Positions 1,447 through 64,000 of a stretch of DNA of 64,000 nt are shown piece after piece. The stretch is from Octopus sinensis. Lineage: Eukaryota. The stretch covers positions 73,780,001-73,844,000 of the forward strand of contig NC_043004.1 in NCBI RefSeq assembly GCF_006345805.1. Reading direction: 5' to 3'. Position 1 is the first letter of the stretch. Each line of letters begins with the position of its first letter. Position numbers and translations under genes: made by a program. The notes under the pieces are model-generated. The model saw only the letters and a list, made by a program, of their open reading frames with translations, had not been told where the DNA came from and did no database searches.

Positions 1447-1501
<55 letters not shown>

Positions 1502-1504
<3 letters not shown>

Positions 1505-1926
1505 AGAGGCTGTGTGGTAAGTAGCTTGCTTACTAACCACATAGTTCTGGGATCAGTCCCACTGCGTGGTACCTTGGGCAAGTGTCTTCTACTATAGCCT
1601 CGGGCCGACCAAAGCCTTGTGAGTGGATTTGGCAGACGAAAAATGAAAAAAAAACCGTCATATATATGTATGTATATAAATGCATGTGTGTATGTTTGTG
1701 TGTCTGTGTCCGTGTGTGTGTATGTTTGTGTGTCTATGTCCCTCGCAACATCGCTGATAACCGATGCTGGTGTGTTTACGTCTCCGTAACTTAGCGGTTC
1801 GGCAAAAGAGACCGTTTGAATAAGTACTAGGGTTACAAAGAATAAGTCCTGGGGTCGATTTGCTCGATTAAAGGCGGTGCTTCAGCATGGCCACAGTCAA
1901 ATGACTGAAACAAGTAATAGAGTAAA
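1502..1926 (+). mobile_element. Bipartite tRNA-derived SINE (family A), complete, with internal microsatellite
   Basis: Head GGCTGTGTGGTAAGTAGCTTGC... with a B-box-like segment and CORE-like ACCTTGGGCAAGTGTCTTCT, then a TA/TG tract, then the 3' half ending ...CAGTCAAATGACTGAAACAAGTAA; many homologous copies in the window. Confidence 0.9.
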
Positions 1927-1935
1927 TTAGTAATC

Positions 1936-5540: not shown

Positions 5541-5665
5541 TATTCTTTCTAAGCCCAGTACTTATTCTATCGGTCTCTTTTGCCGAACCACTAAGTTACG
5601 GGGACGTAAACACACCAGCATCGGTTATCAAACACATGGGGACAAACACAGACACACAAACATAT

Positions 5666-5696
<31 letters not shown>

Positions 5697-5873
5697 CATA
5701 TACATATATACGATAGGCTTCTTTCAGTTTCCGTCTACCAAATCCACTCACAAGGCATTGGTCGGCCCGGGGCTATAGCAGAAGACACTTGCCTACGATG
5801 CCACGCAGTTGGACTGAACCCGGAACCATGTGGTTGGTAAGCAAGCTACTTACCACAAAGCCACTCCTGCGCC
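5541..5873 (-). mobile_element. SINE family A with internal (CA)n/(TA)n
   Basis: Reverse complement of the 1502-1926 element. Confidence 0.9.
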
Positions 5874-6184
5874 ATGTATATATGAATGTATGTGTGAACA
5901 TATGTATAAATAAGCGACGAACCACGTTTACAAATAAACTTATTCTGATGCAATATATATATTAAAAGAAAGGAAGATCTTTCTCAATATGCAAATATAT
6001 ATGCGTTTGGGGATTACACACTGGTCCCTATATAATTGCCAATGCATAATATGCCTGCATCCTCAAGGATGTACGTTTGAATATAGGAGGATTGGGTAAA
6101 ATGAAGTCCAGTAAGAAGTTATCTGTTAATGGTTATCTATAATTATCACGTCAGACTTCTTAATTCTGCAATGACACTCTCTTT

Positions 6185-6202
6185 CTCTCACTCTCTTCTT
6201 CT

Positions 6203-6234
<32 letters not shown>

Positions 6235-6370
6235 TTCTTCTTCTTCTTCTTCTTCTCCTTCTTCTTCTTCTTCTTCTTCTCCTTCTTCTTCTTCTTCTCT
6301 TCTTCTTCTCTTCTTCTTCTTCTTCTTCTTCTTCTTCTTCTTCTTCTTCTTCTCTTCTTCTTCTTCTTCA
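6185..6370. repeat. (TTC)n trinucleotide microsatellite
   Basis: Directly visible. Confidence 0.95.
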
Positions 6371-6506
6371 CTTTCAGTTTCTCTCTCCATTTCTATGTGC
6401 GCACGCGCATATCTGCGTATGTATGTGTGTATATATACGTCTGAACATCTAAATAGTCTGGAAACGACTTGTAGACTGACACGTGCATAAGTTATGTACG
6501 TGTGTG

Positions 6507-6539
<33 letters not shown>

Positions 6540-6578
6540 GTGTGTGTGTCTGTACATGCATATATATACATATATAAG

Positions 6579-6623
<45 letters not shown>

Positions 6624-6638
6624 ATGAATGCATATATG

Positions 6639-7033: not shown

Positions 7034-7830
7034 TTGCAGATGCAACTACTACTGCAACAACAACCACAACAACAACAGTTATTGGAGCTACATTCAAAGA
7101 TGTCCAAAAATGAGGTAAGTTCATTTTCGCCAGACGGCGTGTCCAACTCGGTTAATGAATTCAGTTATAACCCAGAGGAGGGTATAACGGGATTTTTAAG
7201 CAAGATTGCAAATCATGGTCGATCGAACAAAAAGTTAGATTGTTATTGCGAAAATTAGCTCCATTAGAGTATGAACTTTACTGTAATTTCATATTGCCCC
7301 AAAAGCCCAATGAAATTTGTTTTAAAGAAACAATAGAATTACTGTCTAACATATTCGGTGATAAAACTCTCTATAGGAGTGTTGGAATATAATGAAAAAA
7401 TAGAATGATGATTTTATCACAAACGCAGGAACAGTCAACAGAATGTGTGAAAGTTTTAAACTCAAAGAACTTACACTTGACCTGTCCAAGTATCTTATTT
7501 TCGTACAAGGCCTTCTAGCAAGCGAAGATACAGAAATTCGGGCAATAATTCCTTCTAAATTGGAACAAGTGAACCAAGATCTAACTTTACAGTCTGTGGC
7601 AAAAGAATGTCAAAGGATGGTAAACCTGAAACACGATGTAGAAAAATTCAAGAAAGGATTCCTCAAAATACAAATATGCCGACCGGAAAAGTACAACCAA
7701 AAAAGAGCGCCACGTCCTAATCCAATTTCATGATGTGGGGCATACATTTCAGAAAAGACTGTCCATTTAAAAATCAAAAATGTTACAGTTGCAAAAGAAT
7801 TGGTCAGAAGAGTTCACACTGCAGAACAAA
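7034..7830 (+). pseudogene. gag: gag remnant with CCHC zinc knuckle
   Basis: NSVNEFSYNPEEGIT, LIFVQGL..SEDTEIR, and DCPFKNQKCYSCKRIGQKSSHC across frameshifts. Confidence 0.75.
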
Positions 7831-7861
7831 ATTACGAAGGTCAAACGTAGAAAATCCTTGA

Positions 7862-8158
7862 GTGCTCTCAGCAGAAACAAAAACCTCCTCCCAAATAAGA
7901 CACTTCGTACATGCACAAATAAATGGAATACATATTAAACTTCAACTGGATACTGGAAGTGATATTTCAATAATAAATAAGGACACATGGAAGAAAATAA
8001 GGAAACCTATGTTGAGAAAAACAGCGAAATCTGCTGGTAGTGTGACGGACGACAAAATATATTTCATAGGCGAAACGTGGACTTTCACATTTCTAGGGAA
8101 AACATGCAAGGCGAAAGTCTTCGTCCTTAAAAATGCAACCGATCTATTTGGTAGCTGA
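7862..8158 (+). pseudogene. pol: Retroviral-type aspartic protease remnant
   Basis: IKLQLDTGSDISII catalytic motif. Confidence 0.85.
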
Positions 8159-35539: not shown

Positions 35540-35973
35540 TATGTATGCATATAATGTATGTATGTATGTAGGTATGTGTGTGTGTATGTATGCATATAAT
35601 GTATGTATGTGTGTATGTATGTACGTGTGTGTGTATGTATGTATGTAAGTATGTATGTATGTATGTATGTGTGTATGTATGTATGTATGTATGTATGTAT
35701 TTATGTATGTATGTATGTACGTACGTACGTATGTATGTATGTGTGTATGTATTTATGTATGTATGTATTTATGTATGTATGTATGTATGTATTTATGTAT
35801 GTATGTATGTATGTGTGTATGTATGTATGTATGTATGTACGTATGTATGTGTGTATGTATGTATGTATGTATTTATGTATGTATGTATATATGTATGTAT
35901 GTATGTGTGTATGAATGTATGTATGCATGCATGTATGTATGTATGTATGTATGTATGTATGTGTGTGTGTGTG

Positions 35974-36004
<31 letters not shown>

Positions 36005-36132
36005 GTCTGTGTGTGTATGTATGAATGTATGTATGAAATGTATGTATGAATGTATGTATGAATGTATGTATGAATGTATGTATGAATGTATGTATGAATG
36101 TATGTATGTATGTATGTATGTATGTATGTATG
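35540..36132. repeat. (TATG)n array with a (TATGAATG)n sub-array
   Basis: Directly visible. Confidence 0.95.
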
Positions 36133-37210
36133 CATCCAATATTCTACAGCCGTGTATTTTGCTTCCTTTTCTCCCTTATTCTGATATATTTACATTTTGC
36201 TTCTTTAGAATTCTTGTTCTGGTCTCAGCCATTCAGTTTGTATCCCGTTGCAAGCATTTCAATCTGGTCTCCAGAGAAGACATCTACTTCCACTAGCTTC
36301 ACTCCTCATTTGATATATTCGTTGTTGTTGTCACTGTTGTTAATGTTGTCACTGTTGTTGCAGTTATTCTTATACTTGGTTCAATCATTTGACTGCGGCC
36401 ATTCTGGGGCATAGCATTTCAAGAAGAGGAGAGTCGATCAGATCAATCTCAGCACTTATTTATATTTTTAACCTGACACTTATTCTGTCGACATTTGTTT
36501 GCCGAACAGGAAGATTACATGGGTTGCACCACTTTCTCTTTTAATGTTAAGACTAACGTATCGTTAAGACAAGCGTCCATCATGGACAAGACCAAGTAAG
36601 GTCGAAAACACGTGTTTCTGGTGGTCTCATCGCTGGAGATAACGGGGATTTACCTCCCTGCTAGCAATATAAACAGGGGTGTATTTTACCTCAAAAGCCA
36701 ATACAAGAGTTTCTTTGCATGATATTTATCTACCGCATTTTAGTTTATTCTAACAGAACAGCCACATTTAAGTGGGCATAAATATTACCTAACGTACGTA
36801 GTTCCTGGCTGTAATTGACAAGCATTTCTCAAACAATATATGAAAATTTGTAAAAGACATTTAGTGAAGTTTTTACACAGATCCTGCTCTCCTACTTCAT
36901 ATTGTTACTGTATAACACTGGAAACTTGCCCACTTGAACAGATATGCATAATTAGCTCAGTGGTTTATAAAGTCACTCCAGTTCTCCAAAATAATGAAAC
37001 TCAAAAGAAAAAGTACATCGGTGCTACATTGTGTAGGTCTCCGTAACATAGCAACTAGGCAAAAAATCCCGATAGAATATCGAGCTCTGCGATATTTAAT
37101 GAAAAATGTACAGGAATTGGTTTGTTAAACTAAAATCCTTCAAGGCAGTGCTCCACCATGTCCGCAGCCCAATAACTAAAACAAGTAAAGAAAAATCATC
37201 ATCATCATCA

Positions 37211-37245
<35 letters not shown>

Positions 37246-37269
37246 GTTATCATTATTATTATTATCATA

Positions 37270-37515
37270 CTCTTTTACTTGTTTCAGTCATTTGACTGTG
37301 GCCATGCTGGAGCACCGCCTTTAGTCGAGCAAATCAACCCCAGAACTTACTTTCTAAGCCTAGTACTTATTGTATCAGTCTCTTTTGCCGAACCACTAGG
37401 TTACGGGGACGTAAACACACCAGCATCTGTTGTCAAGCGATGTTGGGGGGACAAACACAGACACACAAACATACACACACACACGTACATACACACACAC
37501 ATACACACACACACA

Positions 37516-37587
<72 letters not shown>

Positions 37588-37750
37588 GACGGACTTCTTT
37601 CAGTTTCCGTCTACCAAATCCACTCACAAGGCTTTGGTTGGCCCGAGGCTATAGTAGAAAACACTTGCCCAAGGTGCCACGCAGTGGGACTGAGCCCAAA
37701 ACCATGTGATTCGTAAGCAAGCTACTTACCACACAGCCTCTCCTGTGCCT
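37270..37750 (-). mobile_element. SINE family A, complete, with long internal (CA)n(TA)n
   Basis: Both halves present around the microsatellite. Confidence 0.92.
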
Positions 37751-37852
37751 ATTCTTCTTCTTCTTCTTATTATTATTATTTATTATTATTATTATTATAT
37801 TATTATTATTATATTATTATTATTATTATTATTATTATTATCATCATCATCA

Positions 37853-38941: not shown

Positions 38942-39825
38942 ATAGAGCGCGGTGAATATATTGTTGTCAAAATTACGCAAAAAGGAAAACAACATTGACA
39001 TCTCATTTTAAAATACATATATTTGCCAAAATTACATAAAAATATCTTGAAACACTAAAGAGTAAATGTATTCAATATCGCCATTGACGTCAACCACGGC
39101 CTGCAGACGACTTCGGAATTCCTGCAACTCTTCCGGACGGTCTCCTTGTTTAAGGTGATGAATGCTGCCATAATCCTTACCTTCAGTTCATCTCTGGTGT
39201 CACAAGGAGTTTTGTTTGTCTCTCGCTTAATTGCGCCCCACACATAATAATCAAGGGGGTGGCAGTCTTGGGAGTTAGGTGGCCAGATGTTAGGAGTGAT
39301 GTGGTCGGAGAAATTGACTGACAGCCATGACTGAGTTCTCTTGCTTGTGTGGCATGGTGCAGAGTCCTGTTGACAGACGTAAGGTCTTCCAGCAGCTATC
39401 CTTTCCACCTAGAGCAGCACTACCTCCTCCAGGCACTTGATGTAGGCCTCTTTGTTGATTCCGAGGCTGTGTGGGAAGATGAATGGAGGCATGACATCGC
39501 CATCACTAGTGATCACTGCAAACACCATGATGTTGACTGGATGTTTGATTTTTATCACTCTCAGTTCATGCTTCGAGAACACGGCAAGCCAACGGTTGTT
39601 CTGTGTGTTCACCATCAGTTCGCATTGGAGCTTCCGGTGTGAATGCCAAGCAATGCAGCATGTCATTTCCAAATTTCTGACAAAGTGACTTGCATCATGG
39701 TGCTATTTCATTCACAGACAGTGCCCAACTGACCCTTCTATACTGTGTAGTCGACAAAATAAAAGCAAACAATGCGCATGCACGAAATATAAAATGGCGA
39801 CAATCTACCCATCGCACCCCCTGTA

Positions 39826-47935: not shown

Positions 47936-47951
47936 TTACTAGCTAAATAAA

Positions 47952-48174
47952 TCTTTTTTGTGTTTCAGTCATTAGACTGCTGCCATGCTGGAGTACCACA
48001 TTGGATTTTAAAGCGAATGAAACGACTCCAATACCTATTTCTTAAGCTTGGTACTTATTCTATCGTTCTCTTCTGCCTAACCGCTATGTTATGGGGGTGT
48101 AAACGCGCCAACACCGGTGGTCAAGCGGTGGGGTGGGAGACAAACACAGACACAAAGACAGCCCAATAAATATA

Positions 48175-48209
<35 letters not shown>

Positions 48210-48373
48210 TCGACAGGCGTCCTTCAGCTTCCTTCATCTAAATCCACTCACAAGACTTTGGTCGACCCGAGGCTATAACAGACAACACTTGCCCAAACTG
48301 CCACGCCGTAAAACTGAACCCAGAACCATGTGGTTGGGAAGCAAGCCTCTTACCACACGGCCATACCTGCACC
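47952..48373 (-). mobile_element. SINE family A, complete, diverged
   Basis: Both halves around (TA)n. Confidence 0.85.
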
Positions 48374-48442
48374 TATAAATAAAATAAATGAATGAATAAA
48401 TGAATGATTAAAACACGTTGTCTATTTATCATTATACGACTT

Positions 48443-48492
<50 letters not shown>

Positions 48493-49014
48493 ATCTCCTC
48501 ATGATTTTAGAAACAGCTATTTGTATGGAATGAGGGGAGGACGTCCAGATGAACGGATGGCTGAGCGGATGCATGGACGGATGGACGGATACATATGCAT
48601 GTCTATGGATAGAAGAATGGATGAGTGAACACCGACACCAGCTAATATATTGATGTGTGGCTAATAGAGAATCAAAAATGGCTGTACCCAACCAAAATAA
48701 TATTGTAAGTGAAGGCCATAACAGTTTGGGAGTAAATATTTGAATAAGTCTATTTATGTAAATATTAACGCATCTAATGTACACGCATGCGATTGTATAT
48801 ATGTGCGTACATGCGTGTCTTTGCATGTAGCTGTCTGTATATTGGTATATGTGTGTGTGCAAACACTCAGAGAAGTTGTTATTGACCACAACACACCCTT
48901 ACCAAACCATACACACGGGTACAGATGTTCTTTCCCATGTACACGTATCTGTAAGTGGCGAAGTATGCTTATGTGAGTAAGTGTTTTACAGTGATTATGT
49001 GTATATGTAGACAT

Positions 49015-49421
49015 GGGTACAGGAGTGGCTGTGTGGTAAGTAGCTTGCTTACCAACCACATGGCTGCGGGCTCATTCCCACTGCGTAGCCCCTTGGGTGT
49101 CTTCTACTATCGCCTCGAGCCGACCAAAGCCTTGTAAGTGGATTTGGTAGCCGGAAACTGAAAGAAGCCCATCGAGCACATATATATATATATATAATAT
49201 ATGTATATGTATGTGTGTGTATTTATGCGTTTGTGTTTTTCCCCCCCCCCACCCCAACATCGCTTGACAACAGATGCTGGTGTGTTTACGTCCCCGTAAC
49301 TTAGTGGTTCGGCAATAGAGACCAATAGAATAAGTACAAGGCTTACAAAGAATAAGTTCTGAGGTCGATTTGCTCGACTAAAGGCGGTGCTCAAATGACT
49401 GAAACAAATAAAAGAGTAAAA
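49015..49421 (+). mobile_element. SINE family A, complete
   Basis: Both halves around (TA)n/(TG)n. Confidence 0.9.
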
Positions 49422-54350: not shown

Positions 54351-54413
<63 letters not shown>

Positions 54414-54417
<4 letters not shown>

Positions 54418-55128
54418 ATGGGGCAGAGAGGATGGACGTCTTTGAAAAATTCACAAAATCATTAATTTTAGCTGCAAACAAATTTTATTGATATCAATGT
54501 GTTTGCATTGAATTAACATTTTCCATAATTACGTGTGGAAAGCAACATCCGTCATGTGGTGTTCGCTTTTCATTGATGTGTTTCTGAAGGTGTACTTTCT
54601 CAAGCATAGTCCCATGGTTTAAACTATTGGCCAATAACCAATTTGTACGGGTGGAAATGCAGGTTTTCATGCAAAATATGCGATTACCGATGTCAAGTTC
54701 AGTGGAATGCCTCTGAGCAGAGCGATTCGAACTTCGTATCAAAGTTTGTCTGACGCGTTCCACATTTTCCGGGGTCCGTACCGTTCGTGGCGCCCCCACC
54801 GGTCTCCTATTCATTAGCATACCTCGTGTACGCAGTGCATTCACCCAACGTAATATTGTGTTACGGGTGGAAACAGTTTGATTTCGGTGAATGTTGAAGT
54901 GGGGCCGAAACTCACGTTGAACTGCTGTCACAGTCTCATTACTCTTCACGTAACTATCGTAGCCAAAAACACTAAGCTTTATCAACCACCGCGCCATGGC
55001 TTCACCTGAAAAGAAAAAAGAAATGCTGAGACACTACTGACCGAATGGCACCTGTTGGACGTATGTCCACCAACCTGGGGCTGAGTAACAGCCATTTCAA
55101 AAACGTCCGTATTCTCTGTCCCACCCTC
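54414..55128 (-). mobile_element. Tc1/mariner-superfamily element (DUF4817-type N-terminus, rosa/DD41D-like), catalytic domain deleted
   Basis: ORF 54997-54494 SNETVTAVQREFRPHF...RNTILRWV...RTVRTPENVERVR; frameshifted ILHENLHFHPYKL; tail HMTDVAFHT*; TIRs AGG(A/G)TGGG(G/A)CAGAGA..GGACGT.TTTGAAA inserted in (TA)n. Confidence 0.88.
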
Positions 55129-55380
55129 TTTTACTTGTTTCAGTCATTTTGACTGTAGCCATGCTGGAGTTCCGCCTTTTAGTCGAGCAAATCGCCCCCG
55201 GGTCTTATTCTTTGTAAGCCTAGTACTTATTCTATCGGTCTCTTTTGCCGAATCGCTAAGTTATGAGGACGTAAACACACGTAAACACACATATGAACGA
55301 CGGGCTTCTTTTAGTTTCCGTCTACCAAATCCACTCACAAGGCTTTGGTCGGCCCGAGGCCATAGTAGAAGACACAGCAC
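55129..55380 (-). mobile_element. SINE family A, internally shortened
   Basis: 3' half joined to a truncated 5' half with almost no microsatellite. Confidence 0.85.
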
Positions 55381-55408
55381 TTCTACGCCTATATATATAT
55401 ATATATAA

Positions 55409-55444
<36 letters not shown>

Positions 55445-55735
55445 TGTATGTATGTATGTATGTATGTATATATATATATACAGTTTGCACATTGAAGAGA
55501 ACTCGTGTCTAAATGTCATTAATCTGTGTGTGTGTGTTGTGTGGTTGTGTACGTAAGAAAGGAAGTGAGAAAGAAATTATTCATGTAGAGAGAGATGTAG
55601 ATAGCAGATGCCGAGAAGTACAGAGAAATGGAGGCAGAAACATGTGGCGAAAAATGAGAAATTTTAAGAGAAATTTCTTATTCATTACAACTAATAACTC
55701 TCTTCTATGCATTTGCACGCTCGTGAGTGTTAGCA

Positions 55736-55776
<41 letters not shown>

Positions 55777-56026
55777 AATTATATTTGGAATATACGTGTA
55801 TATGTGTGTGAGGATGTATAGGAATGCATGTATAACTATCTGCGTGTATACATATGCACATGCATGTGTGTATAAATACGAACATACATACTTGAATGCG
55901 AGCATACATAGTACATGCATATATATTTAGGTGTATACATACATAACGCACATACATATAGATATAAGCATAAATATAAACACACATACATTTGTAATAT
56001 ATATTTCGTGGATATATACATTACAT

Positions 56027-56137
56027 ACATACATACATACATATCTACATACATACATACATACATACATATATACATACATACATATATACATACATAC
56101 ATATATACATAAATACATACATACACACACACATACA

Positions 56138-56171
<34 letters not shown>

Positions 56172-56316
56172 CATACATACATATATACATAAATACATAC
56201 ATACACACACACATACATACATACATACATACATACATACATACATACATACATACACACATACATACATACATACATACATACATACATACATACATAC
56301 ATACATACACACATAC
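56027..56316. repeat. (TACA)n array
   Basis: Directly visible. Confidence 0.95.
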
Positions 56317-56539
56317 ATCGAAAAATCGAACTCCGTTCAAGAGCAACAATAACAAAAAACGGTGATCATAGATCAAGGAACGAATCGAAGAATTCCTTTC
56401 ATAAAGCTTTGTCCTTTCGAATCTTGCCAAAAGCAGAGACTTCCGACAGAAGAACGATTCCATTGAAATCTTGTCACCATTAACTTTTCCTCTTATCACT
56501 AACCAAAAGAGATTCCAGAATGTTCCAAGTTCAATCACT
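56317..56539 (-). other. Candidate exon (223 nt, one open frame)
   Basis: Acceptor ttatgtatttcag; the donor gtatgt is supplied by the microsatellite edge; no homology recognised. Confidence 0.15.
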
Positions 56540-56617
56540 CTGAAATACATAACTCAAAGTCCAATTGAACTGTTGGCTCTAAGTATATATTTATACATGC
56601 GTACATATATACATACT

Positions 56618-56667
<50 letters not shown>

Positions 56668-56713
56668 CAGAAAGAGAGAGGGGCAGAGGGAGAGAGAGAG
56701 AGATTGGTAGGTG

Positions 56714-56745
<32 letters not shown>

Positions 56746-57080
56746 CATGTATACATGCATACATATATACATACATTCGTATATACATATGTACATATTT
56801 ACATTTATATAAATACATGTATATGTGTGTAGCGTACATGCGCGCGTGTTCGTATGTGTGTGTTTGCGTGTGTGTGTGCATGTTTGTGTGTATGTGTGTG
56901 TGTGTGTGTATGCGCGCGCACATACACACACATAGCACCATGTAAAGGTCAGAACAGAATGCATTGTTATCTTAACACGACACAATTCTTCCAACAATTG
57001 CTTATATTTTTCTTTTCCTTTTTTTATTTATTTAACGAAAGAAAAATTCATTAAATAAGACTACGTGGTTTCAGGTTCAA

Positions 57081-57165
57081 TCAGCGACGCTTTCCGTATT
57101 CGTGTCTACTCTTACTCTTGAATAAGCAGAGTAAGAGCACACACGAAGACGGAAAGCGTCACTGA
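57081..57165 (-). ncRNA. Candidate pre-miRNA-like hairpin
   Basis: 38-bp arms (57081-57118 / 57128-57165) with a 9-nt loop; the minus strand gives 2 G-U wobbles and 2 mismatches, versus 4 mismatches on the plus strand. Confidence 0.45.
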
Positions 57166-57345
57166 GGAGGTCACAGGTGTGTGAAGATTTCCGGACAATG
57201 GGCATGAGTTGGAATAAGAACAGTAATAAACGAGTAAAGAACGAAGACACAGTGCGAGTGTTTATTTGTCCAAAAAAGAAAAAAAATTACCATCCCGAAA
57301 TACAACAATATTTTTTTTTTAATCATGCAACACAAATTCATAACC

Positions 57346-57405
<60 letters not shown>

Positions 57406-57649
57406 TCAGCAAAAATTTAGATTCAAATGAATATGGTACTTAATTTAGATGCACCAGAAATCTGTATGGTGTTATCCATAAAAATCTGTGGGGTGATTAT
57501 AATCAAAATAAGCAACAAGAATGACTCCGGTAATTTGGTACGATCGTTTCGTACTACATCATTTTATTAAATGTTGTAAGTATTACAACAGTTTTTAAAT
57601 GCTGAGCACTCATCAGCCAATTATAGAGGTTTTCCATTAATACAAAAAA

Positions 57650-58854: not shown

Positions 58855-59088
58855 ATATGTATGTGTGTGTGTGTGCAGTTGTGTGGTTAAGTAGTTCATT
58901 TCGCATCCACACGCTTTCAGATTCTGTCACACTACGCTGCACTGGGGGGGGGGTGCTAGTGTGTCCTGTTACAGCCCTCAGTCAGTTAATGTGGTGTAAA
59001 TGGGAAACCCGTCGCATGTACGTGTGTGTGTGTGTGTGTGTATGTGTGTGTGTGTGTGTATGTGTGTGTGTGTGTGTGAAAGATAGAT

Positions 59089-62013: not shown

Positions 62014-62089
<76 letters not shown>

Positions 62090-62475
62090 GCGATGACGAT
62101 GACGACGATGATGATGATGATGATCTATAACGCTTACTCTTTTTTTTTATTCTTTTTCCTGTTTCAGTCATTTGACTGTGACCATGCTGGAGCACCGCCT
62201 TTAGACCTGACGCGACACAGAGGCAGATTACAGAGGCCATACACATAGTAATATATGACATGGGTGTATGACAACAGTTCTCAGATTATGGACATAGAAT
62301 AAGAACAATAATAGTAAACAAGTGAAGAGCGACTATACAGTGCGTGTGTTTATTTAACAAGAAAAACGACAGTCCCGAAATATAACTACACACACACACA
62401 CACACAACACACATATATATATATATATATATACATACATATATATAATGTGTGTGTATTCTTTTATTCTTTTAT

Positions 62476-62790: not shown

Positions 62791-63106
62791 CCCCCAACTA
62801 GCAATATATGTTGTATATAAAGGGTGCAGCGTCGCACCGATAACCAGCCGGCGGACGATCTGCTTGGGGTTAAACTAGTAGTAATATGGAACAGCCACTT
62901 TGTTTTTATGCGACTGACTACTTTTTATATCTGATTCGTTTTTGGAATCGTCTCTCGAAGTAATATAACGCAATAAACAATTGCATGAAATTTGAAGATG
63001 AAATATGTATATGTGTGCGTGTATTTGTATTAACAGCTTCATTCACAATTACGATACGTACCTATCTGCATCTGCGCGCACACACACACACACACATTTA
63101 CATCCA

Positions 63107-63462
63107 TCCATCCATCCATACATACATACATATATACATACATACATACATACATACATACATACATACATACATACATACATACATACATACATACATA
63201 CATACTACACACACACATACATACATACATACATACATACATACATACATACATACATACATGCATGCATACATTACATACATACATACACGCATACATT
63301 ACATACATACATACACGCATACATTACATATATACATACATACATACATACATACATACATACATACATGCATACATACATACATACATACATACATACA
63401 TACATACATACATACATACATACATACATACATACATACATACATACATACATACATACATA
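63107..63462. repeat. (TACA)n array
   Basis: Directly visible. Confidence 0.95.
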
Positions 63463-64000
63463 AACTGTAATCATTTTCAAACTTATGGGTTTTCCTCCTC
63501 GCCGCTGTGTTTGTTGTCAGTTCCGCACCAATTCTTTCAACAACCCACTCAAAAGTTCACATCAGACGCTCAGTCATTTCCACCCAACCTAGGTTTTATG
63601 CCACGGGGAACAACCTACCCACGCTCGTTTCTTAGTCACCAAAATATGGTGACATATAAAAGACAGGGTCAACAAGGTCAGTAGAATGGACTTCTCATTT
63701 TTTGTCTTTTCCTCTTTAATTTTGCAATCCCACATGAAATTTCCTGCATCTGACTTCATTTCGTGATGTTCTATGTACATACATATTATTTTGCATAGAG
63801 GGCAGCACGGAATATTTCCCTTATCAGCTATTAATTGGAGTTGACCTCAACGATTTGTATGTATACATATACATGCATTTATATGTGTGTGTGGTGTGTG
63901 TGTGTATGTGTGTGTGTGTGCGTGTGTGCCTGCGTGTGTGTGCTTATGAAGGGACATGGCCTAGTGGTACATATGGTAGGGCCTGTTGAGGAAAAGAAAT

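What the first reader, a model, noticed from the sequence alone, without database searches (positions are those of the whole stretch)
57081..57165. Drosha-sized hairpin in unique sequence: candidate novel microRNA on the minus strand
Seen: arms TCAGCGACGCTTTCCGTATTCGTGTCTACTCTTACTCT and AGAGTAAGAGCACACACGAAGACGGAAAGCGTCACTGA form a 38-bp stem with a 9-nt loop. There is no second copy in the window and no TSD or TE context. Two of the four arm differences become G-U pairs only in the minus-strand RNA, so it folds better on that strand. Known: Drosha substrates have ~35-bp stems with a few mismatches, and coleoid cephalopods have an expanded lineage-specific miRNA repertoire. Inference: an intronic miRNA or hairpin/endo-siRNA source. 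I did not find a canonical CNNC motif at the expected offset.
Basis: partly seen in the sequence, partly recalled or inferred. Interest (0 to 1): 0.7.

Follow-up and report, generated by a model that had tools for sequence, protein, structure and literature searches.

The report
Isolated near-perfect 85-nt hairpin repeat
A real 85-base inverted repeat sits in repeat-rich, octopus-like non-coding DNA; it has the size and shape of a microRNA precursor, but nothing available here shows it is a gene, and it is most likely a fairly recent DNA copying accident.

Summary
The hairpin is real and lies exactly where reported, at 57081-57165, with 38-nt arms and a 9-nt loop. The arms match at 34 of 38 positions. 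The minus-strand RNA folds at -61.8 kcal/mol (z -13.5) and the plus strand at -50.5 (z -10.8). It is the only short-loop hairpin in the 64 kb that is not a microsatellite.

Stem length, pairing and loop size fall within published ranges for Microprocessor substrates. Both strands lack a correctly placed CNNC, a basal UG and an apical UGU/GUG. No Rfam family matches. The minus-strand call rests on two transition differences, which is statistically empty (p about 0.25-0.5).

"No TE context" is only partly right. A dispersed repeat copy starts 10 nt downstream, and microsatellites flank the region. No target-site duplication exists, and the arms match no SINE or other sequence in the window.

Genomic copy number, conservation and small-RNA expression could not be tested, because a control showed the accessible databases hold almost no octopus non-coding DNA.

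The best reading is a non-genic inverted duplication of the template-switch type, now decaying neutrally. A Made1-like MITE and a young lineage-specific miRNA remain possible. Interest is low.

The parts
57081..57118 (.). Left arm of the inverted repeat (38 nt; TCAGCGACGCTTTCCGTATTCGTGTCTACTCTTACTCT)
   Evidence: It carries 4 CpGs. It has no homologue elsewhere in the window.
57119..57127 (.). 9-nt spacer or apical loop (TGAATAAGC on +, GCUUAUUCA on the minus-strand RNA)
   Evidence: It contains no UGU or GUG on either strand.
57128..57165 (.). Right arm of the inverted repeat (38 nt). It differs from the reverse complement of the left arm at positions 5 (C/T, in a CpG), 18 (A/C), 26 (C/G) and 28 (A/G).
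   Evidence: Arm divergence is 4/38 = 10.5% (95% CI 3-25%).
57176..57306 (+). Context: a copy of a dispersed repeat that starts 10 nt after the hairpin. A second copy lies at 62263-62386. Both end in a microsatellite.
   Evidence: blastn gives 69% identity over 137 nt, E 4e-13; alignment. The octopus-type SINE profile does not cover it. The hairpin itself has no counterpart at the second copy.
56580..56935 (.). Context: compound (TA)n/(GA)n/(CA)n/(TG)n microsatellite block that bounds the island on the left
   Evidence: It is the source of the spurious sub-threshold mir-297/mir-466 Rfam hits.
57350..57400 (.). Context: (TA)n microsatellite that bounds the island on the right

Best explanation
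This is a non-genic inverted duplication, a DNA palindrome with a 9-nt spacer. It probably arose locally in one step and has been decaying neutrally since.

The most likely mechanism is a replication template switch. The nascent strand folds back on itself, or jumps to the opposite strand, copies about 40 nt in reverse complement, and then returns to the original template. That makes a perfect hairpin-forming repeat with no target-site duplication and no other genomic copy. Four later substitutions, one of them a CpG>TpG transition, produced the present 34/38 match.

Shown here: the structure, its uniqueness in the window, the absence of a TSD, the absence of similarity to the SINE or any other window sequence, and the absence of miRNA sequence motifs and known-family matches.

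Inferred: the template-switch origin and the lack of function.

If the locus is transcribed, which is unknown, either strand would form a 38-bp duplex. By its dimensions, that duplex is an acceptable substrate for Microprocessor/Dicer, and also for the very active coleoid ADARs. The locus is therefore raw material for a miRNA rather than a demonstrated one.
For: - The repeat is near-perfect with a very short spacer: 34/38 complementary, 9-nt loop.
- It is the only non-microsatellite hairpin of its class in 64 kb, and the arms have no second copy.
- No TSD of any length sits at the repeat boundaries; there is no TA or TTAA, and flank similarity has p = 0.19.
- The arms are not related to the abundant SINE. 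An nhmmer profile of 8 SINE heads gave no hit at E<=100 against the whole window, and a full-length SINE profile gave no hit at E<=1000 against the hairpin region and locus B. They are also unrelated to the second copy of the neighbouring repeat.
- The pattern of arm differences fits neutral decay: 2 transitions and 2 transversions. Two differences break pairing on both strands. The G-U bias toward the minus strand is not significant; P(>=2 of 4 G-U-compatible | p about 0.3) is about 0.35, by my own calculation.
- The hairpin is over-stable compared with typical animal pre-miRNAs, which have MFEI about 0.7-1.0 (my own knowledge). MFEI here is 1.54 on the minus strand and 1.26 on the plus strand.
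- None of CNNC, basal UG or apical UGU is present.
- Template switching is documented to create whole perfect hairpins 30-55 nt long in one event, from sequence with no pre-existing repeat (PMC10710096).
Against: - No outgroup or ancestral sequence was available, so the template-switch event itself is not demonstrated.
- Genome-wide copy number could not be measured, so a low- or medium-copy MITE family is not excluded.
- Seven of eight CpGs in the arms are retained (hairpin CpG o/e 1.49 against 0.83 for the window). Stem length, pairing and loop are all in the Microprocessor-preferred range. Both observations are compatible with some constraint or with function.
- 21% of human pri-miRNAs also lack all three sequence motifs (PMC6004053, abstract listed), so their absence is weak evidence.
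Confidence: 0.5

Rival explanations
1. A TIR-only miniature transposon (MITE): a single copy of a family made of two roughly 38-bp terminal inverted repeats around a few internal bases. Human Made1 is like this (2 x 37 bp + 6 bp). Made1 copies are near-perfect palindromes, and some of them became the mir-548 genes.
For: - The architecture is almost the same as Made1 (PMC1784062).
- The termini read CAG(C/T)G...CACTG, which resembles Tc1-type ends (my own knowledge).
- The window carries DNA-transposon debris, including a DUF4817 HTH transposase fragment at 54494-54997. By eye, ORFs at 2411-2683 and 39055-39408 also look like transposase, but neither matched a Pfam family.
- The 10.5% arm divergence fits an old insertion.
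- One copy per 64 kb says nothing about genome copy number.
Against: - There is no TSD at the repeat boundaries. Flanks are AA and GG, there is no TA or TTAA, and there is no 3-8 bp direct repeat (p = 0.19). At about 5% divergence per arm, a TA on both sides should mostly have survived.
- No related TIR or second copy exists in the window.
Confidence: 0.2
2. A genuine, evolutionarily young (species- or genus-specific) microRNA gene, most likely on the minus strand. Drosha would cut about 11-13 nt from the base and Dicer near the loop. The products would be roughly CCGUCUUCGUGUGUGCUCUUAC (5p) and AAGAGUAGACACGAAUACGGAA (3p).
For: - A 38-nt stem, 95% pairing and a 9-nt loop fall in the ranges enriched in processed pri-miRNAs (PMC5340965).
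- The flanks at the base are mostly unpaired.
- Coleoids have a documented miRNA expansion, and the published octopus set is said to be an underestimate because a locus had to be present in two species (PMC9699675).
- Molluscan short hairpins would be expected to enter the miRNA Argonaute (PMC12479628).
Against: - No expression data are available.
- There is no CNNC at the required offset; the only one is at flank position 13, against the expected 5-7. There is also no basal UG and no apical UGU/GUG.
- A mismatch at position 18 lies inside a region depleted of unpaired bases.
- No known family matches. The best hit, mir-4716, scores 41.5 bits against a gathering score of 76, and this reflects generic hairpin scoring.
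- The hairpin k-mers are absent from the held supplements of the octopus miRNA paper and from the literature, although those supplements hold no precursor sequences.
- The stem is far more perfect and stable than typical conserved miRNAs.
- The base rate is under about 1-2% of suitable hairpins.
Confidence: 0.07
3. A transcribed but unprocessed intronic or UTR hairpin whose main fate is A-to-I hyper-editing by ADAR. It would act as a dsRNA editing substrate rather than a small-RNA source.
For: - A 38-bp almost perfect duplex forms on either strand.
- In octopus, most A-to-I editing falls in introns and 3'UTRs, which are rich in hairpin ADAR substrates (PMC9699675).
- Editing has been proposed as the way molluscs 'melt' dsRNA from inverted repeats (PMC12479628).
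Against: - Transcription of the locus is unknown.
- No host gene or exon was identified in the window.
- This describes a passive fate rather than a function.
Confidence: 0.15
4. An assembly or sequencing artefact, such as a fold-back chimera.
For: Fold-back artefacts do occur in long-read data (my own knowledge).
Against: - The arms are only 38 nt long and differ at 4 positions, whereas artefactual fold-backs are long and identical.
- The flanks are ordinary and different on the two sides.
Confidence: 0.02

Closest known systems
Template-switch-mutation (TSM) hairpins, the raw material of de novo miRNAs (Monttinen, Frilander & Loytynoja 2023, PMC10710096)
   Same: It is a single-locus, near-perfect inverted repeat with a 30-55 nt stem and a short central loop. 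It has no TSD and arose from non-repetitive sequence. Structurally it is fit for Microprocessor.
   Different: The event is not demonstrated here because there is no outgroup. The known cases are in primates and rodents. Transcription and processing of this locus are unknown.
Made1 MITEs and the hsa-mir-548 family (Piriyapongsa & Jordan 2007, PMC1784062)
   Same: Both are palindromes of about 80-85 bp, built from two 37-38 bp arms around a 6-9 bp core, and both form a very stable hairpin when transcribed.
   Different: Made1 has TA target-site duplications, thousands of copies and a known parent (Hsmar1). This hairpin has no TSD, no second copy in 64 kb and no related TIR.
Canonical animal pri-miRNA, including the octopus-specific 'Novel' families of Zolotarov et al. 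2022 (PMC9699675)
   Same: Stem length, percentage pairing, loop size and single-stranded flanks all fit.
   Different: There are no reads, no conservation evidence, no sequence motifs and no family match. The stem is much more perfect than in established miRNAs.
Drosophila-type hpRNA / endo-siRNA loci
   Same: Both are inverted repeats that give an intramolecular dsRNA.
   Different: hpRNA stems are hundreds of bp long and need a dedicated siRNA Dicer and Argonaute. This stem is 38 bp, and molluscs appear to lack that pathway (PMC12479628).

Membership tests
Canonical animal microRNA (Microprocessor substrate; MirGeneDB-type criteria) | Imperfect hairpin with a stem of about 35 bp (33-39) and >=82% pairing | tested here: met
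   38 positions. 36 are paired on the minus strand and 34 on the plus strand. Ranges are from PMC5340965.
Canonical animal microRNA (Microprocessor substrate; MirGeneDB-type criteria) | Unstructured apical loop of about 8-16 nt (>=10 nt preferred), with single-stranded basal flanks | tested here: met
   The loop is 9 nt, which is marginal. In the 165-nt folds, the bases flanking the stem are largely unpaired on the minus strand.
Canonical animal microRNA (Microprocessor substrate; MirGeneDB-type criteria) | At least one primary-sequence determinant in register: basal UG, apical UGU/GUG, or CNNC 16-18 nt from the cut | tested here: not met
   None is present on either strand. The only CNNC is at flank position 13 on the minus strand, against the expected 5-7. 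This feature is not obligatory: about 21% of human pri-miRNAs lack all three (PMC6004053, abstract listed). The relevance of these motifs to molluscs is assumed.
Canonical animal microRNA (Microprocessor substrate; MirGeneDB-type criteria) | 5p and 3p reads of about 22 nt with homogeneous 5' ends and 2-nt 3' overhangs | not testable with these tools
   No small-RNA read data are accessible.
Canonical animal microRNA (Microprocessor substrate; MirGeneDB-type criteria) | Presence in a second species, with arms conserved more than the loop | not testable with these tools
   No cephalopod genomes are in the searchable collections. A control with the very high-copy SINE ORF returned a single protein, so the negative results are uninformative. 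The 20-mer scans of metagenome and prokaryote contigs gave only chance bacterial hits.
Canonical animal microRNA (Microprocessor substrate; MirGeneDB-type criteria) | Match to a described miRNA family | tested here: not met
   Rfam 15 gave no match at gathering score in the whole window. The sub-threshold hits on the hairpin were mir-4716 at 41.5 bits against 76 and mir-4773 at 38.9 bits against 100.
MITE (TIR-only, Made1-like) | Element made almost entirely of two terminal inverted repeats | tested here: met
   2 x 38 nt + 9 nt.
MITE (TIR-only, Made1-like) | Target-site duplication flanking the TIRs | tested here: not met
   The flanks are ...TTCAA and GGAGG... There is no TA or TTAA, and the best direct similarity between flanks has p = 0.19.
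MITE (TIR-only, Made1-like) | Multiple dispersed copies, and TIRs shared with an autonomous element | tested here: inconclusive
   No other copy or related TIR exists in the 64-kb window. Genome-wide copy number is not testable here.
Template-switch-mutation hairpin | Adjacent reverse-complement repeat with a short spacer, single locus, no TSD | tested here: met
Template-switch-mutation hairpin | An ancestral or outgroup sequence lacks the repeat and is convertible to the present sequence by one reverse-complement copy | not testable with these tools
   No orthologous sequence is available. The paralogous repeat copy at 62130-62262 shows no homology to either arm.
Mirtron | Hairpin ends coincide with 5' GU and 3' AG splice sites | tested here: not met
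   Read directly from the sequence. The minus-strand hairpin starts UCAGUG and ends GCUGA. The plus-strand hairpin starts UCAGCG and ends ACUGA. Neither strand has a GU...AG frame.
hpRNA / endo-siRNA locus | Long inverted repeat processed by a dedicated siRNA pathway | tested here: not met
   The stem is only 38 bp. Molluscs show no detectable endo-siRNA pathway (PMC12479628).
Octopus tRNA-derived SINE | Sequence homology to the SINE consensus | tested here: not met
   A pairwise local alignment of the left flank and arm to one SINE head scored 15, against shuffles of 9.3 +/- 1.4. nhmmer with profiles of 8 heads and of 4 full-length copies gave no hit on the hairpin.

The most novel reading that the evidence does not exclude
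The hairpin is a newborn octopus miRNA caught near its birth. A template-switch event in repeat-rich DNA made a Microprocessor-sized stem. The stem is already transcribed (minus strand) and processed, and it has begun to acquire the mismatches typical of mature miRNA precursors. That would give a concrete mechanistic example of how the unusually large coleoid miRNA expansion was fuelled. Its source is explicitly called unknown in PMC9699675.
Probability: 0.05. Interest if true: 0.5.

Novelty: new member of a known kind. Interest (0 to 1): 0.17.

Why it matters
As it stands the locus matters little. Animal genomes hold very many hairpin-forming inverted repeats, and only a small fraction are genes.

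It would matter if small-RNA data showed precise processing. The source of the roughly 90 novel miRNA families of octopuses is an open question, and a single-copy hairpin with no TSD and a traceable one-step origin would be a clean test case for the 'template switching makes miRNAs' model outside mammals.

There is also a practical point for the scan. Near-perfect isolated hairpins need copy-number and read evidence before being called miRNA candidates, and a strand call based on two G-U pairs carries no statistical weight.

Tried and rejected
1. Known RNA family. Rfam in e-value mode around the locus and in gathering mode on the whole window gave only generic sub-threshold hairpin hits. The mir-297/mir-466 hits nearby are microsatellite artefacts.

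2. Other copies in public data.
- 20-mer scans of metagenome and prokaryote contigs gave 9 hits. All share only the 20-mer inside unrelated bacterial sequence.
- Exact-protein look-ups of three window ORFs on or next to the hairpin found nothing.
- A homology search with the stop-free frame through the hairpin found nothing.
- A control with the SINE ORF returned one protein. These databases therefore contain almost no octopus non-coding DNA, and the negative results are void.

3. Reaching octopus DNA through the neighbouring transposase ORF. The best relatives are 76-80% identical paralogues. The two contigs fetched (L010 at GC 0.51, L011 at GC 0.36) share only the TE with the window and show no SINE match to it, so they are probably other organisms. 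The O. bimaculoides protein is not on record.

4. Octopus miRNA paper supplements. They hold seeds, targets and expression values but no precursor sequences, and no hairpin k-mer matched. A full-text k-mer search found only unrelated PCR primers.

5. SINE origin of the left arm. A B-box-like GGTTCAATC and a pairwise score of 15 looked suggestive. Profile searches did not confirm it, so I rejected it.

6. Hairpin as part of the neighbouring dispersed repeat. The second copy has no homologue of either arm.

7. tRNA-like or Pol III unit. ARAGORN found no tRNA, and I saw no A box by eye.

8. Mirtron. There is no GU...AG frame.

9. TSD of any length. None was found.

10. Assembly artefact. The arms differ at 4 sites.

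Full report
**Observation.** It consists of two 38-nt arms (57081-57118 and 57128-57165) around a 9-nt spacer.
- The arms are complementary at 34 of 38 positions. The four differences lie at positions 5, 18, 26 and 28 from the base.
- As RNA, the minus strand folds into one uninterrupted stem with two 1x1 mismatches and two G-U pairs: -61.8 kcal/mol, z = -13.45, and 0 of 200 dinucleotide shuffles fold as well.
- The plus strand gives the same stem with four unpaired sites: -50.5 kcal/mol, z = -10.8.
- The stem survives folding with 40-nt flanks on both strands. As single-stranded DNA it folds at -32.5 kcal/mol.
- A scan of the whole window for ungapped hairpins (arm >=24, loop 3-40) found 75. 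The other 74 are (TA)n/(TG)n microsatellites, so this is the only one of normal sequence complexity.

**Surroundings.** The window looks like octopus DNA.
- It carries about nine heads and ten tails of a tRNA-derived SINE (consensus).
- It also carries a DUF4817 transposase fragment, whose best named relative is an Octopus bimaculoides protein at 70% identity, retroelement protease debris and very many microsatellites.
- No host exon, tRNA or Rfam family was found anywhere in the 64 kb. 'Intronic' is therefore unverified, and no neighbouring miRNA raises the prior.
- The hairpin sits in a roughly 415-nt island between two microsatellite blocks.
- 'No TE context' is only partly right. Window 57176-57306, which starts 10 nt after the right arm, is a 69%-identical copy of 62263-62386 (E 4e-13). 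This is a dispersed repeat different from the SINE. The second copy has nothing resembling either hairpin arm.

**miRNA features.** Measured against published pri-miRNA rules, the shape is acceptable. The stem is 38 nt (optimal 36 +/- 3), pairing is 95% (>=82%) and the loop is 9 nt (enriched range 8-16) (PMC5340965). The rest gives no support.
- Neither strand has a CNNC at flank positions 5-7. The only one, on the minus strand, is at position 13.
- Neither strand has a UG at the basal junction, or a UGU/GUG at the apical junction.
- About 79% of human pri-miRNAs have at least one of these motifs (PMC6004053, abstract listed), so their joint absence is mild negative evidence. It assumes the motifs matter in molluscs.
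- One of the two minus-strand mismatches (position 18) falls in the stretch 16-21 nt from the base, where miRNA stems are depleted of unpaired bases.
- The hairpin is much more stable than established precursors. MFEI is 1.54 on the minus strand and 1.26 on the plus strand, against roughly 0.7-1.0 for typical animal pre-miRNAs (my own knowledge).
- The hairpin ends lack a GU...AG frame, so it is not a mirtron.

**Strand.** It is statistically empty, however.
- Each transition difference favours one strand or the other at random. Two of two on a named strand has probability 0.25, or 0.5 for 'the same strand'.
- The position-5 change is a CpG>TpG transition, the commonest neutral mutation.
- Two of four differences break pairing on both strands.
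- With an expected G-U-compatible fraction of about 0.3 per substitution, seeing at least 2 of 4 has probability about 0.35.

The arm differences therefore look like neutral decay of a once-perfect palindrome.

**Copy number and conservation.** I could not test these.
- The searchable DNA collections are prokaryotic, viral or metagenomic. A 20-mer from the arm found nine loci that share nothing beyond the 20-mer.
- Exact look-ups of three ORFs on or beside the hairpin, and a homology search with the open frame through it, found nothing.
- A control search with the ORF of the extremely abundant SINE returned a single protein. The protein collection therefore holds essentially no octopus non-coding sequence, and these negatives mean nothing.
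- Contigs reached through the neighbouring transposase are other organisms carrying the same TE family.
- The octopus miRNA paper's held supplements contain no precursor sequences. The hairpin k-mers occur nowhere in the searchable literature except as chance primer matches.

**Origin.**
- The exact repeat boundaries are flanked by AA and GG. There is no TA or TTAA, and no 3-8 bp direct repeat. The best flank-to-flank similarity (AGGTTCA against AGGTCA, offset from the boundaries) has p = 0.19. That argues against a transposon insertion, although the architecture (2 x 38 + 9) is strikingly like Made1 (2 x 37 + 6), the MITE that gave rise to mir-548 (PMC1784062).
- A tempting resemblance of the left flank and arm to the SINE B-box region was not confirmed by profile searches.
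- A single-locus, TSD-less, short-spacer inverted repeat is what replication template switching produces in one event, including from sequence with no prior repeat (PMC10710096).
- The arm divergence is 10.5% (CI 3-25%). That is about the same as between the two most similar SINE heads in the window, which are 89% identical. The duplication is therefore not brand new.

**Most likely mechanism.** I commit to a non-genic inverted duplication of the template-switch type that has since decayed neutrally (confidence 0.5).
- If the locus is transcribed, either strand forms a 38-bp duplex. That duplex fits Microprocessor and Dicer by size and would also be a natural ADAR substrate.
- Octopus editing is concentrated in hairpin-rich introns and UTRs (PMC9699675).
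- The rivals are a Made1-like MITE (0.2), a passive ADAR-edited hairpin (0.15), a true young miRNA (0.07) and an artefact (0.02). Origin and function are partly independent, since a TSM or MITE hairpin can also become a miRNA.
- For a base rate, more than 6,000 suitable TSM hairpins in primates yielded 18 curated miRNAs.

**Novelty and verdict.** This is a real and clean feature of a known kind. It is a new, unannotated instance of a hairpin-forming inverted duplication, not shown to be a gene. Whether it is a miRNA cannot be told with these tools, and the prior is low. It would become moderately interesting only if small-RNA reads showed precise processing, because it would then be a traceable example of miRNA birth in the lineage with the largest invertebrate miRNA expansion. 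Interest 0.17.

Noticed in passing
window 57176-57306 and 62263-62386: These are two copies of an unnamed dispersed repeat, 69% identical over 137 nt (E 4e-13), each ending in a microsatellite. At the second locus the repeat follows a truncated SINE tail (62150-62205). The SINE profile does not cover it.
   Followed up: partly
window, e.g. 5560-5875(-), 37265-37756(-), 1490-1930(+), 47945-48380(-), 49009-49420(+): This is a tRNA-derived SINE with an internal (TA)n(TG)n tract. The 64 kb holds about 9 heads and 10 tails. Head-to-head identity is 77-89% against the copy at 5715-5875. Its tail ORF reads FQSFDCGHAGAPPL. It fits the abundant octopus SINE as I remember it.
   Followed up: partly
window 58877-58977 and 2183-2264: These are weak, diverged matches to the SINE head profile (E 1.6e-6 and 7e-6). 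They may be older or related tRNA-derived elements.
   Followed up: no
window 54411-54997(-); loci L010 6262-7458 and L011 10012-11216: The DUF4817 helix-turn-helix transposase fragment is 83.6% (L010, GC 0.51) and 76% (L011, GC 0.36) identical at the DNA level to contigs from two ENA assemblies. Those contigs show no SINE match to the window. Protein relatives include insects (Lygus, Blattella, Homalodisca). The same TE family therefore occurs in very different hosts, so horizontal transfer is possible.
   Followed up: partly
window 7443-8158(+): Retroelement debris: a gag-like ORF followed by an aspartic-protease ORF (Asp_protease_2, E 4e-5).
   Followed up: no
window 55380-57410: Dozens of sub-threshold Rfam hits to mir-297, mir-466, mir-3149 and mir-1277 all lie on (TG)n/(TA)n microsatellites. 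They are low-complexity artefacts, not miRNA candidates.
   Followed up: yes
window 35578-36296, 55836-56318, 63005-63470: Long arrays of a period-12 'ATGTATGTATGC'-type repeat, seen as MYVC/IHTY pseudo-ORFs of up to 213 aa. A separate tract at 6129-6633 reads as poly-Leu/Ser on one strand and poly-Glu/Lys on the other, and an (ATA)n tract lies at 62016-62090.
   Followed up: no
window 57081-57165: The hairpin keeps 7 CpGs (o/e 1.49) in a window whose CpG o/e is 0.83. That could mean low methylation, a young age, or simply small numbers.
   Followed up: no
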